From assembly GCF_001194135.2 (NCBI RefSeq), contig NC_068987.1, positions 53,338,205-53,402,204 on the forward strand: DNA of 64,000 nucleotides, given 5' to 3'. The notes beneath the pieces were generated by a model. It ran no database searches. It was not told the origin of the DNA and saw only the letters and a list, made by a program, of their open reading frames with translations. Position 1 is the stretch's first letter. Each line of letters begins with the position of its first letter. The translations under genes were made by a program, and so were the position numbers. The stretch comes from Octopus bimaculoides. Its lineage: Eukaryota. Below, in pieces: positions 609-830 of the stretch.

Positions 609-830
609 AGCAGCCGAACCCAGCAGGCGTTTCTACTAACCGCCTGTGCTGGGTTCGGCTGCTGTAAATGTCAGACCAGCAAGGGGAAGCGGCTGACCTC
701 CCCTGTTCGAAAGTTATAATGGACACAGGTTCGTGTGTCACATAGCTAGCTAGAGGCGATGGCCTCTGGGGCTAATCAACGGCAGCATTCATCCTAATTT
801 TTTGGACTGCCATGTTGGCTTGGCGATAAC
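609..830 (+). other. Unclassified multi-hairpin structured repeat (homologous to 35895-36100)
   Basis: Five hairpins: 609-663 (17 perfect bp + 4 bp), 682-704, 722-739, 752-767 and 809-824. Aligns by eye with 35895-36100, with stems conserved. Confidence 0.65.

What the first reader, a model, noticed from the sequence alone, without database searches (positions are those of the whole stretch)
609..830. Unclassified structured-RNA-like repeat with compensatory base changes, present twice in the window
Seen in the sequence: 609-830 aligns with 35895-36100, 35 kb away, and the stems are conserved while loops and sequence drift. Hairpin D is AGAGGC-GATG-GCCTCT (752-767) versus GGAGGA-GATG-TCCTCC (36019-36034): two double-compensatory pairs around an invariant GATG loop. 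Its lower stem uses G.U in one copy and G-C in the other, which favours this strand as the folded one. Hairpin C is GACACA/TGTGTC with different loops (intact in the left arm at 36 kb). Hairpin E is GCCA-N8-TGGC with unrelated 8-nt loops. Hairpin B keeps a GGGA..TCCC stem, and hairpin A keeps CGAAC/GTTCG with a C-G to G-C swap. A possible closing stem GCTG/CGGC versus ACTG/CAGT also covaries. Inference: selection on RNA or ssDNA structure in a dispersed family, such as a retroelement UTR, a SINE body, a ribozyme-like domain or an ncRNA. I could not fit it to hammerhead, HDV-like, twister or tRNA consensus.
Basis: partly seen in the sequence, partly recalled or inferred. Interest (0 to 1): 0.78.

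Follow-up and report, generated by a model that had tools for sequence, protein, structure and literature searches.

The report
Octopus hammerhead-linked retroelement RNA domain
The flagged sequence is the hairpin-rich body of a very abundant octopus mobile element whose best-preserved relatives carry a hammerhead ribozyme just upstream, so the paired base changes are real but belong to a known kind of selfish RNA-based element.

Summary
The core observation holds. Window 668-838 is homologous to both arms of a 149-nt inverted repeat at 35738-35886 / 35959-36107, and hairpins C, D (with a lower stem) and E are real.

It is not a two-copy oddity. A covariance model finds five copies of the module in the window. 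Read depth implies roughly 10^4 or more copies in the genome, in at least three families (F1, F2, F3), and the module is also abundant in three related species.

On nine family or species consensus sequences rebuilt from read pile-ups:
- 22 predicted pairs are 98% paired.
- 7 pairs keep pairing through changes on both sides (0 of 500 shuffles reach this; slid controls give 0-1).
- All four one-sided changes give G.U on the + (sense) strand.

Hairpin A and the "closing stem" are not shared features.

Just upstream of the module, the F3 consensus carries a canonical type I hammerhead motif (1 of 3000 shuffles). F2 has the same fold with U4->C, at 35899-35943 on the minus strand. F3 units lie head to tail with a period of about 350 nt. 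Copies sit in (TA)n, and copy 2 is an inverted pair.

Best reading: retrozyme-like elements, probably dependent on Penelope-like elements. This is a new member of a known kind. Self-cleavage and RNA circles were not tested.

The parts
668..841 (+). Copy 1. A family F1 member that holds the module only. Its 5' side is cut near 662-668, so it has no hammerhead region. It ends near 838-841, where other copies either continue or meet (TA)n.
   Evidence: Depth is about 6,500 over 674-835 against 0-4 in the flanks. Loose ends lie at 837/839/840 and before 662-674. Covariance-model hit at 683-841, 119 bits.
682..704 (+). Hairpin B of copy 1 (AGGGG...CCCCT).
   Evidence: Read from the sequence. The equivalent stems are AGGGA/TCCCT in F2 and AGGGG/CCCCT in F3. 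MAFFT did not align the 5' strands, so it was not counted formally.
722..739 (+). Hairpin C of copy 1 (GACACA-GGTTCG-TGTGTC).
   Evidence: six pairs, three of them with changes on both sides across families and species.
743..774 (+). Hairpin D of copy 1. Lower stem 743-747/770-774, internal loop, upper stem 752-757/762-767, GATG loop.
   Evidence: 11 pairs, four of them with changes on both sides. It is present in the single-sequence minimum-energy fold.
809..824 (+). Hairpin E of copy 1 (GCCA-N8-TGGC).
   Evidence: the stem never varies, so it is conserved but says nothing about covariation.
609..663 (.). A near-perfect long hairpin (17-bp perfect arms 609-625/647-663) next to copy 1. It is a separate repeat of lower copy number, not part of the shared module.
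   Evidence: depth 100-190 in organism A, against more than 6,000 for the module.
35738..35958 (-). Copy 2, left member (family F2, minus strand). It holds the module (35738-35885) and the 5' hammerhead-like region, and its outer end abuts (TA)n.
   Evidence: inverted-repeat arms; 151.6 bits; depth about 14,000-21,000.
35899..35943 (-). Hammerhead-like motif of the left F2 member, read on the minus strand: CGAACG|CCGACGA|AGGG-AAATAA-CCCT|GAA|A-CCCGGG-T|C^|CGTTCG.
   Evidence: Relaxed descriptor hit with the core starting at 35937(-) (0.65 chance hits are expected per window, so it is not significant on its own). It aligns with the canonical F3 motif. Rfam hammerhead models do not hit it.
35959..36152 (+). 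Copy 2, right member (family F2, plus strand). It is 5'-truncated just downstream of the hammerhead region. Hairpins: B 35966-80, C 35991-36006 (one pair broken), D 36011-41, F 36061-72, E 36075-90. Family sequence continues to 36152.
   Evidence: 146.1 bits; depth stays above 8,000 to 36147; loose end at 36152.
16055..16319 (+). Copy 3. A decayed family F3 unit running from its 5' start through the module to (TA)n and an assembly gap. Hairpin C is at 16203-18 and hairpin D at 16221-53.
   Evidence: consensus and 5' boundary; 16165-16319, 62 bits.
16101..16150 (+). The place of the type I hammerhead in copy 3. The window copy is mutated (TTAAAGA core). The family consensus reads CCAGTA|CTGAAGA|GAGGCAGAAATAGCCC|GAA|ACCAGGCTGGT|C^|TGCTGG.
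   Evidence: Majority letters (16102 G>C, 16104 T>G, 16107 T>C, 16109 A>G, 16127 T>C, 16138 A>G, 16142-44). Descriptor test.
15823..16054 (+). The preceding F3 unit (module plus 3' region). It is 5'-truncated and joined head to tail to copy 3, with a period of about 342-356 nt.
   Evidence: 15823-15964, 32 bits, E=1.5e-6; 15900-62 against 16255-317, z=15.7; 3' ends at 16016/16054 followed by TTATATATAT and a new 5' start in other copies.

Best explanation
WHAT IT IS. The flagged repeat is the conserved, multi-hairpin body of a superfamily of short non-autonomous retroelements of octopuses. These elements are built like animal (non-LTR) retrozymes, the small hammerhead-carrying repeats that travel with Penelope-like elements (PLEs).

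A full unit is about 350 nt and reads 5' to 3' on the sense strand:
- a type I hammerhead motif;
- hairpins B, C, D (two-part stem with a GATG loop), F and E;
- a 3' region of about 100 nt.

SHOWN HERE
- Very high copy number.
- Three diverged families that share the domain.
- Covariation in stems C and D.
- A canonical hammerhead motif in the F3 consensus, and the same fold with U4->C in F2.
- Head-to-tail F3 units, an inverted F2 pair, and (TA)n at element ends.

INFERRED
- The element is transcribed and, where the core is intact, the hammerhead cuts multimeric RNA into unit-length molecules.
- These fold compactly and may be circularised.
- They are copied back into DNA by a reverse transcriptase supplied in trans, most likely that of a Penelope-like element.
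- Stems C and D are kept because the RNA intermediate needs that fold, whether for stability, ligation or recognition by the reverse transcriptase.

THE TWO FLAGGED COPIES
- Copy 1 is a 5'-truncated F1 member with no ribozyme part.
- Copy 2 is a head-to-head pair of F2 members. Its hammerhead-like motif lies on the minus strand at 35899-35943 and is probably crippled.
For: ABUNDANCE AND FAMILIES
- DNA read depth is about 20,000 (F2), about 6,500 (F1) and about 250 (F3), against 0-4 in the flanks.
- The core 36011-36092 is also very abundant in three related species.
- The consensus sequences are homologous over 140-280 nt, with z = 13-29.

STRUCTURE
- RNAalifold finds C, D and E without guidance.
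- 98% of cells are paired. Seven of 22 pairs changed on both sides. 0 of 500 shuffles reach this, and slid controls give 0-1.
- All four one-sided changes are G.U on the sense strand.

HAMMERHEAD
- A strict type I descriptor hits the F3 consensus once: helix I 6 bp, helix II 4 bp, helix III 4 bp, GUC cleavage triplet.
- It hits 1 of 3000 shuffles of that consensus, gives no hit in the window, and gives 2 hits in 20 shuffled windows.
- The aligned F2 motif is CGAACG|CCGACGA|AGGG-AAATAA-CCCT|GAA|A-CCCGGG-T|C^|CGTTCG.
- Helices I and II differ in sequence between F2 and F3 but stay paired in each.

ARCHITECTURE
- F3 forms a head-to-tail dimer with a period of about 350 nt.
- Copy 2 has an adjacent inverted 5'-truncated partner.
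- (TA)n lies at element ends.
- These are the habits described for PLEs and retrozymes in PMC8557442 and PMC7229834.

FOLDING
- The F3 unit folded as a circle gives -122.5 kcal/mol, z = -5.5.
Against: - Rfam's hammerhead models hit no copy in the window, even in 91-101-nt searches at E<=10.
- The two flagged families have non-canonical cores (F2: U4->C; F1: C3->U and G8->A). They probably do not cleave, yet they are the abundant ones.
- The F3 consensus and the nine aligned sequences were rebuilt from read pile-up summaries (majority letters and 30-nt loose-end consensus strings). They are not individual genomic copies, and several rows join a loose end to the window's core.
- The nine rows amount to about three deep lineages plus a few variants.
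- F3 has 49% G+C, above the under-45% given for retrozymes.
- RNA reads show equal depth on both strands and no discrete ends over F1 or F2. F3 RNA was not examined.
- No comparison with octopus PLE terminal repeats was possible.
Confidence: 0.6

Rival explanations
1. It is an ordinary SINE superfamily. A pol III head of small-RNA origin is followed by a highly conserved body domain (Ceph or CORE type, partly derived from the RTE 5' UTR), and the element is moved by RTE or another LINE. The hammerhead-like motif is a coincidence.
For: - Octopus genomes are reported to be dominated by SINEs, many of them unclassified (PMC8967140; PMC13282606).
- Conserved SINE body domains, some of which form hairpins, are known (PMC5804259).
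- Kojima 2018 (PMC5786205) prints Ceph-domain fragments (CCTTGGGAAAG; CCTCCAGCTATGGGTTAAATAGT) that loosely resemble TCCCTTGGCAAAC and CCTCC/TGGGGCTAAAAG in F2.
- RTE-type elements carry microsatellite-like 3' ends (PMC6007223).
- LINE reverse-transcriptase fragments are present in the window.
Against: - No tRNA, 5S or other small-RNA head was found by ARAGORN or Rfam, either on the window copies or (ARAGORN only) on the consensus sequences.
- The printed 23-mer is not significantly similar (z <= 1).
- The MIR CORE test fails for the module but detects a true CORE-SINE 100 nt away (z = 7.3).
- The hammerhead descriptor hit has a chance rate of about 3e-4.
- Partial tandems and inverted pairs are not typical of SINE insertions.
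Confidence: 0.2
2. The hairpins are kept or created by a mutational process rather than by selection on RNA. Template switching during replication (quasi-palindrome correction) makes both arms change together, so the "compensatory" changes say nothing about function.
For: - The family is prone to palindrome formation. Copy 2 has 149-nt arms that are 98% complementary.
- Copy 1 is joined to a perfect 17-bp hairpin.
- Some members carry a perfect 28-nt palindrome insert (loose ends at 711 and 832).
Against: - The changes are seen in consensus sequences of families with 10^2-10^4 copies, so they were present in successful source elements.
- Loops differ freely in sequence and length (GGTTCG, GTCG, GCTG, GAAAG, GACTG) while stems stay paired.
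- Intermediates are G.U on one strand only.
- The lower stem of D, separated by an internal loop, also covaries.
Confidence: 0.1
3. It is a DNA-level foldback element or MITE. The long inverted repeat at 36 kb is its terminal inverted repeat, TA is the target-site duplication, and the small hairpins are transposase-binding sub-repeats.
For: - There are 149-nt inverted arms with TA-rich flanks.
Against: - The right arm continues as family sequence for 45 nt beyond the end of the left arm.
- Typical F2 copies are not long palindromes. Depth at 35952-35993 is 1,100-3,000 against about 14,000 for the mirror position, and the loose ends at 35869 and 35944 show only a short, imperfect inner repeat.
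- Copies 1 and 3 have one arm only.
Confidence: 0.05

Closest known systems
Animal non-LTR retrozymes (type I hammerhead repeats of corals, mussels, salamanders and others; Cervera & de la Pena 2020, PMC7229834)
   Same: - Unit length of a few hundred nt (about 350 here).
- Head-to-tail units.
- A type I hammerhead with a short helix III and a palindromic loop.
- A strongly self-paired unit RNA (z = -5.5).
- Co-occurrence with Penelope-like elements in the host genome.
   Different: - The two abundant families (F1, F2) are mostly dispersed single or inverted copies with non-canonical hammerhead cores.
- G+C is about 49%.
- Cleavage and circular RNA have not been shown.
- The papers I could read do not mention octopus or cephalopods.
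Penelope-like elements: terminal repeats (pLTR) carrying hammerheads, and their insertion habits (Craig et al. 2021, PMC8557442)
   Same: - Partial tandems.
- An inverted 5'-truncated copy next to a full one.
- Insertion into microsatellites, including (TA)n.
- Hammerhead motifs near the ends.
   Different: - No PLE reading frame (RT plus GIY-YIG) is linked to these copies in the window.
- Homology to octopus PLE terminal repeats could not be tested.
Schistosoma Sm-alpha SINE-like elements with a hammerhead (recalled from memory: Ferbeyre et al. 1998)
   Same: - A short, high-copy, SINE-like retroelement of about 330 nt with a type I hammerhead.
- The F1 helix II loop reads CAAAUA, which I recall as the loop of the schistosome ribozyme.
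   Different: The resemblance is recalled, not tested. No sequence comparison was run.
Highly conserved SINE body domains (CORE, Ceph/'Cega', Inv and others; PMC5786205, PMC5804259)
   Same: - A domain of about 80-190 nt shared by otherwise diverged short retroelement families and by several species.
- The Inv domain is reported to form conserved hairpins.
   Different: - No small-RNA head.
- No significant match to the MIR CORE or to the printed Ceph fragment.
- Here the conservation has a concrete structural signal, namely covariation.

Membership tests
Hammerhead ribozyme, type I | Core C3-U4-G5-A6-N7-G8-A9, G12-A13-A14, A15.1-U16.1 and H17, with helices I, II and III in type I order | tested here: met
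   Met by the F3 family consensus only (1 of 3000 shuffles). The window copies deviate: copy 3 has a TTAAAGA core, and copy 2 has CCGACGA (U4->C) with all helices present. Copy 1 lacks the region.
Hammerhead ribozyme, type I | A match to the curated Rfam covariance models (Hammerhead_1 and relatives) | tested here: not met
   No hit at gathering score on the whole window, nor at E<=10 on short stretches around copies 2 and 3. The consensus itself could not be submitted to the tool.
Hammerhead ribozyme, type I | Self-cleavage at the predicted site | not testable with these tools
   This needs in vitro transcription or RNA end mapping.
Animal non-LTR retrozyme | Head-to-tail repeats of 150-450 bp, each unit carrying a type I hammerhead | tested here: inconclusive
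   A head-to-tail F3 dimer with a period of about 342-356 nt lies in the window, and unit-(TA)5-unit junctions occur in four species. In the window, however, one unit is 5'-truncated and the other has a mutated core. F1 and F2 are not tandem here.
Animal non-LTR retrozyme | Low G+C (<45%) and a highly self-paired unit RNA expressed as circles | tested here: inconclusive
   Self-pairing is supported (63% paired, z = -5.5). G+C is 0.49. Circular RNA was not tested.
Penelope-like element dependants | Partial tandem or inverted insertion structure, and insertion into microsatellites | tested here: met
   Copy 2 is an inverted pair with a 5'-truncated partner, flanked by (TA)n. (TA)n follows element ends in other copies. 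F3 forms a partial tandem.
Penelope-like element dependants | Sequence homology of the ends to an autonomous PLE of the same genome | not tested
   No octopus PLE consensus or genome assembly was reachable with these tools.
SINE (pol III, small-RNA-derived head) | A tRNA-, 5S- or 7SL-derived head with A/B (or A/IE/C) boxes | tested here: not met
   ARAGORN finds nothing on the window or on the three consensus sequences. Rfam gives no tRNA or 5S match at E<=10.
CORE-SINE | Similarity to the CORE domain (MIR consensus, written from memory) | tested here: not met
   Local alignment gives z between -1.3 and 2.1 for both copies and both strands. Positive control: the neighbouring element at 15631-15825(-) gives z = 7.3, 0 of 1000 shuffles.
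Ceph-SINE (Ceph/'Cega' domain) | Similarity to the Ceph domain | tested here: inconclusive
   Only a 23-mer and an 11-mer are printed in the accessible paper. The 23-mer gives z <= 1. The full consensus sequences (SINEBase, Repbase) were not available.
MITE / foldback DNA transposon | Matching terminal inverted repeats and target-site duplications in typical copies | tested here: not met
   The arms end at different points. Typical copies lack the long inverted repeat, and copies 1 and 3 have a single arm.

The most novel reading that the evidence does not exclude
Some of the high-copy "SINE-like" families of octopus genomes may be descendants of hammerhead retrozymes. On this reading they have lost ribozyme activity but kept a covariation-supported RNA domain of about 150 nt (hairpins C, D, E). 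That domain would be the cis-acting element recognised by the mobilising reverse transcriptase (Penelope-like), which would explain how copies without a working ribozyme reached 10^4 or more per genome. It would give a concrete structural reason for one case of the long-standing puzzle of why body domains of short retroelements stay conserved.
Probability: 0.25. Interest if true: 0.6.

Novelty: new member of a known kind. Interest (0 to 1): 0.42.

Why it matters
Hammerhead-carrying short retroelements are known in many animals, but the papers I could search do not report them in cephalopods. Most octopus "SINE" families remain unclassified. If this reading is right, it would do three things:
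- reassign abundant octopus repeats to the retrozyme / Penelope-dependent class;
- provide a structured RNA domain with real covariation that can be tested for a role in mobilisation;
- explain palindromic and (TA)n-associated assembly trouble in these genomes.

It does not point to a new class of RNA or a host gene.

Tried and rejected
ATTEMPTS TO FETCH MORE COPIES AS SEQUENCE ALL FAILED
- A degenerate hairpin-D pattern found nothing in metagenome contigs.
- The element's spurious ORF found one UniRef entry (Octopus bimaculoides), which is not on record as a gene.
- Homologues of a LINE reverse-transcriptase fragment in the window led to an unrelated genome.
- Covariation therefore had to be tested on consensus sequences rebuilt from read pile-ups.

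FAMILY ASSIGNMENTS TRIED
- Rfam, whole window and four short stretches: only chance miRNA-like hits on the flanking (TA)n and on the 609-663 hairpin.
- tRNA search: nothing.
- MIR/CORE similarity: rejected.
- A 5S-rRNA-like head (CCCTGAAAC, GTCTG...): dropped. Rfam shows nothing, and the motif turned out to be helix II plus GAAA of the hammerhead.
- Ceph-domain 23-mer: not significant.
- HDV-like, twister and other ribozyme classes: no Rfam signal.
- Searching paper texts for the sequence strings found only unrelated primers.
- Relaxed hammerhead descriptor hit at 8174(+): taken as chance, since 0.65 hits are expected per window.

Full report
WHAT IS AT THE COORDINATES

The 36-kb locus is a large inverted repeat. 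Its arms are 35738-35886 and 35959-36107, each 149 nt and 98% complementary, with 72 nt between them. Both sides are flanked by (TA)n. The first locus aligns to one such arm over 668-838 at about 70% identity.

A covariance model built later finds five copies of the shared module in the window:
- 35738-35885 (-), 151.6 bits
- 35960-36107 (+), 146.1 bits
- 683-841 (+), 119.2 bits
- 16165-16319 (+), 62.4 bits
- 15823-15964 (+), 32 bits

Rfam at gathering score and ARAGORN find nothing in the window.

HOW COMMON IT IS

The only protein-database relative of a spurious ORF in the element is an Octopus bimaculoides entry. The sequencing runs that hold the window share one coded species label.

I laid about 1.9 Gb of raw genomic reads at 80% likeness or better. 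This is roughly 0.7-fold coverage if the genome is about 2.7 Gb, a figure from my own knowledge. Depths were:
- about 20,000 over each arm of copy 2;
- about 6,500 over 674-835;
- about 250 over 16196-16235;
- 0-4 in the unique flanks.

So there are at least three families:
- F1, which includes copy 1;
- F2, which includes copy 2;
- F3, which includes copies at 15.8-16.3 kb.

Copy numbers are of the order of 10^4, more than 10^4, and 10^2-10^3 respectively. Contigs of three related species hold the same module. The block 36011-36092 is the most conserved and most abundant part.

Region 609-663 behaves differently. Its depth is 100-190, and typical F1 copies carry another sequence there (TTGATAAGGGGCAAATACCCTGAAACTAGTCTGCAG). 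It is therefore not part of the shared homology.

COVARIATION

I could not fetch other copies as sequence. Instead I rebuilt consensus sequences from the majority letters and the 30-nt loose-end consensus strings of the pile-ups.

Hairpin D upper stem:
- F1: AGAGGC-GATG-GC(T/C)TCT
- F2: GGAGGA-GATG-TCCTCC
- F3: AGAGGA-GATG-TCCTCT

Hairpin C:
- F1: GACACA-GGTTCG-TGTGTC
- F2: GACACA-GTCG-TGTGTC
- F3: GATGCA-GCTG-TGCATC
- Species C variant: GGCACA-GAAAG-TGTGCC
- Species D variant: GGCACA-GAAAG-TGTGTC, a G.U intermediate

On an alignment of nine such sequences (A2), RNAalifold on its own predicts hairpins C and E and a two-part hairpin D, whose lower stem is TAGCC/GGCTA, TAGCT/AGCTA or TAACC/GGTTA.

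Counting pairs:
- 22 pairs, with 98% of cells paired.
- 7 pairs have changes on both sides.
- 0 of 500 column shuffles reach any of the four informative measures.
- Sliding the partners by 1-3 columns gives 36-49% pairing and 0-1 double changes.
- The four one-sided changes are all G.U on the + (sense) strand.

Hairpin E never varies. Hairpins B and F look compensated between families (AGGGG/CCCCT against AGGGA/TCCCT; GTCC/GGAC against ACCC/GGGT). MAFFT did not put them in register, so I do not count them.

Caveats:
- The rows are reconstructions.
- Several rows join a loose end to the window's core.
- They represent about three deep lineages plus a few variants.

THE UPSTREAM HAMMERHEAD

The three consensus sequences stay homologous 5' of the module.

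The F3 consensus there reads CCAGUA|CUGAAGA|G(A)GGC-AGAAAUA-GCCC|GAA|ACCA-GGC-UGGU|C^|UGCUGG. This is a complete type I hammerhead: every core nucleotide is present, with a GUC site and a 6-bp helix I. Each letter that differs from the decayed window copy (16101-16150) is a majority letter in organism A's own reads.

A strict descriptor written for this purpose gave:
- one hit in the 349-nt F3 consensus;
- hits in 1 of 3000 shuffles of that consensus;
- no hit in the real window;
- 2 hits in 20 shuffled 60-kb windows.

F2 has the aligned motif with U4->C. In the window it lies on the minus strand at 35943->35899: CGAACG|CCGACGA|AGGG-AAAUAA-CCCU|GAA|A-CCCGGG-U|C^|CGUUCG.

F1 has UUGAUAA|GGGG-CAAAUA-CCCC|GAA|A-CUAG-U|C, which carries two core changes.

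Helices I and II differ in sequence between F2 and F3 but pair in each. Helix III is minimal with a palindromic loop, as described for amphibian and PLE hammerheads (PMC7229834).

Rfam's hammerhead models do not hit the mutated window copies.

ARCHITECTURE

F3 units lie head to tail. Window 15823-16054 is followed directly by 16055-16319. The overlap 15900-62 against 16255-317 scores z = 15.7, giving a period of about 342-356 nt. In four species the 3' end is followed by TTATATATAT and the 5' start of a new unit.

Copy 2 is a full-length-like minus-strand member with an inverted, 5'-truncated partner. Element ends abut (TA)n.

Partial tandems, adjacent inverted 5'-truncated copies and microsatellite targets, including (TA)n, are the habits described for Penelope-like elements, whose terminal repeats carry hammerheads (PMC8557442). 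Short tandem type I hammerhead repeats are the animal non-LTR retrozymes (PMC7229834; bioRxiv 10.64898/2026.07.22.740005).

The F3 unit folded as a circle is strongly self-paired: -122.5 kcal/mol, z = -5.5. Single copies fold with z = -1.6 to -2.9.

WHAT IT IS NOT

- No small-RNA head was found.
- There is no CORE similarity, whereas the same test detects a real CORE-SINE at 15631-15825(-).
- The printed Ceph-domain fragment is not significantly similar.
- Typical copies are not long palindromes and have no matching termini, which argues against a MITE.

VERDICT

The object is a high-copy selfish element of a known kind, hammerhead-linked and retrozyme- or Penelope-like. It is apparently not described for cephalopods in the literature I could search.

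Not shown: ribozyme activity, circular RNA, the identity of the mobilising enzyme, and the function of stems C and D. The two flagged copies themselves lack a canonical hammerhead.

Noticed in passing
window 15631-15825 (-): A genuine CORE-type SINE. It contains GGTTCTGAGTTCAGTCCC...CTGTGTGGCACCTTGGGCAAGTGCC and aligns to the MIR core with z = 7.3 (0 of 1000 shuffles). It sits directly 5' of the truncated F3 unit and may have interrupted it.
   Followed up: partly
window 609-663: A near-perfect hairpin with 17-bp perfect arms, belonging to a separate repeat of lower copy number (depth about 100-190; majority letters differ at 631, 632, 638 and 643). Its arms (GCCGAACCCAGCAGGCG / CGCCTGTGCTGGGTTCGGC) resemble the hairpin B region of F1, so it may be a palindromised duplicate of it.
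   Followed up: partly
loose ends at window 711 and 832: A few hundred reads of the F1 family continue into a perfect 28-nt palindrome, GGTTCGTCCATCGATCGATGGACGAACC. This looks like an insert carried by some family members.
   Followed up: no
window 7862-8155 (+): An ORF fragment matches the Pif1 helicase 2B domain (Pfam E = 5.7e-8). It is probably a Helitron remnant.
   Followed up: no
window 51403-52132 (-), 55434-56039 (-), 9838-10374 (-): Decayed LINE reverse-transcriptase fragments (RVT_1). The 201-aa piece has more than 2,000 homologues at E <= 1e-30 in ENA assemblies. The best is a 78%-identical "E. coli" partial protein on a 586-bp contig, which looks like contamination of that record.
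   Followed up: partly
whole window (15 N runs, e.g. 4686-5103, 15117-15613, 16336-16750, 56609-57333): Many of the assembly gaps are bordered by (TA)n or (CA)n microsatellites. Elements of the family studied here end in such (TA)n tracts, so this element class may contribute to the gaps.
   Followed up: no
window 29681-30030 vs 60860-61224; 11743-11887 vs 12042-12186 (inverted): Other dispersed and inverted repeat pairs at 88% identity, unrelated to the finding.
   Followed up: no
window 35945-35958 and reads joining 35944 with 36152 on opposite strands: About 230 reads join position 35944 to 36152 on opposite strands. Other genomic copies therefore also carry inverted junctions at these points, so inverted pairs may be a recurrent product of this family's insertion.
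   Followed up: no
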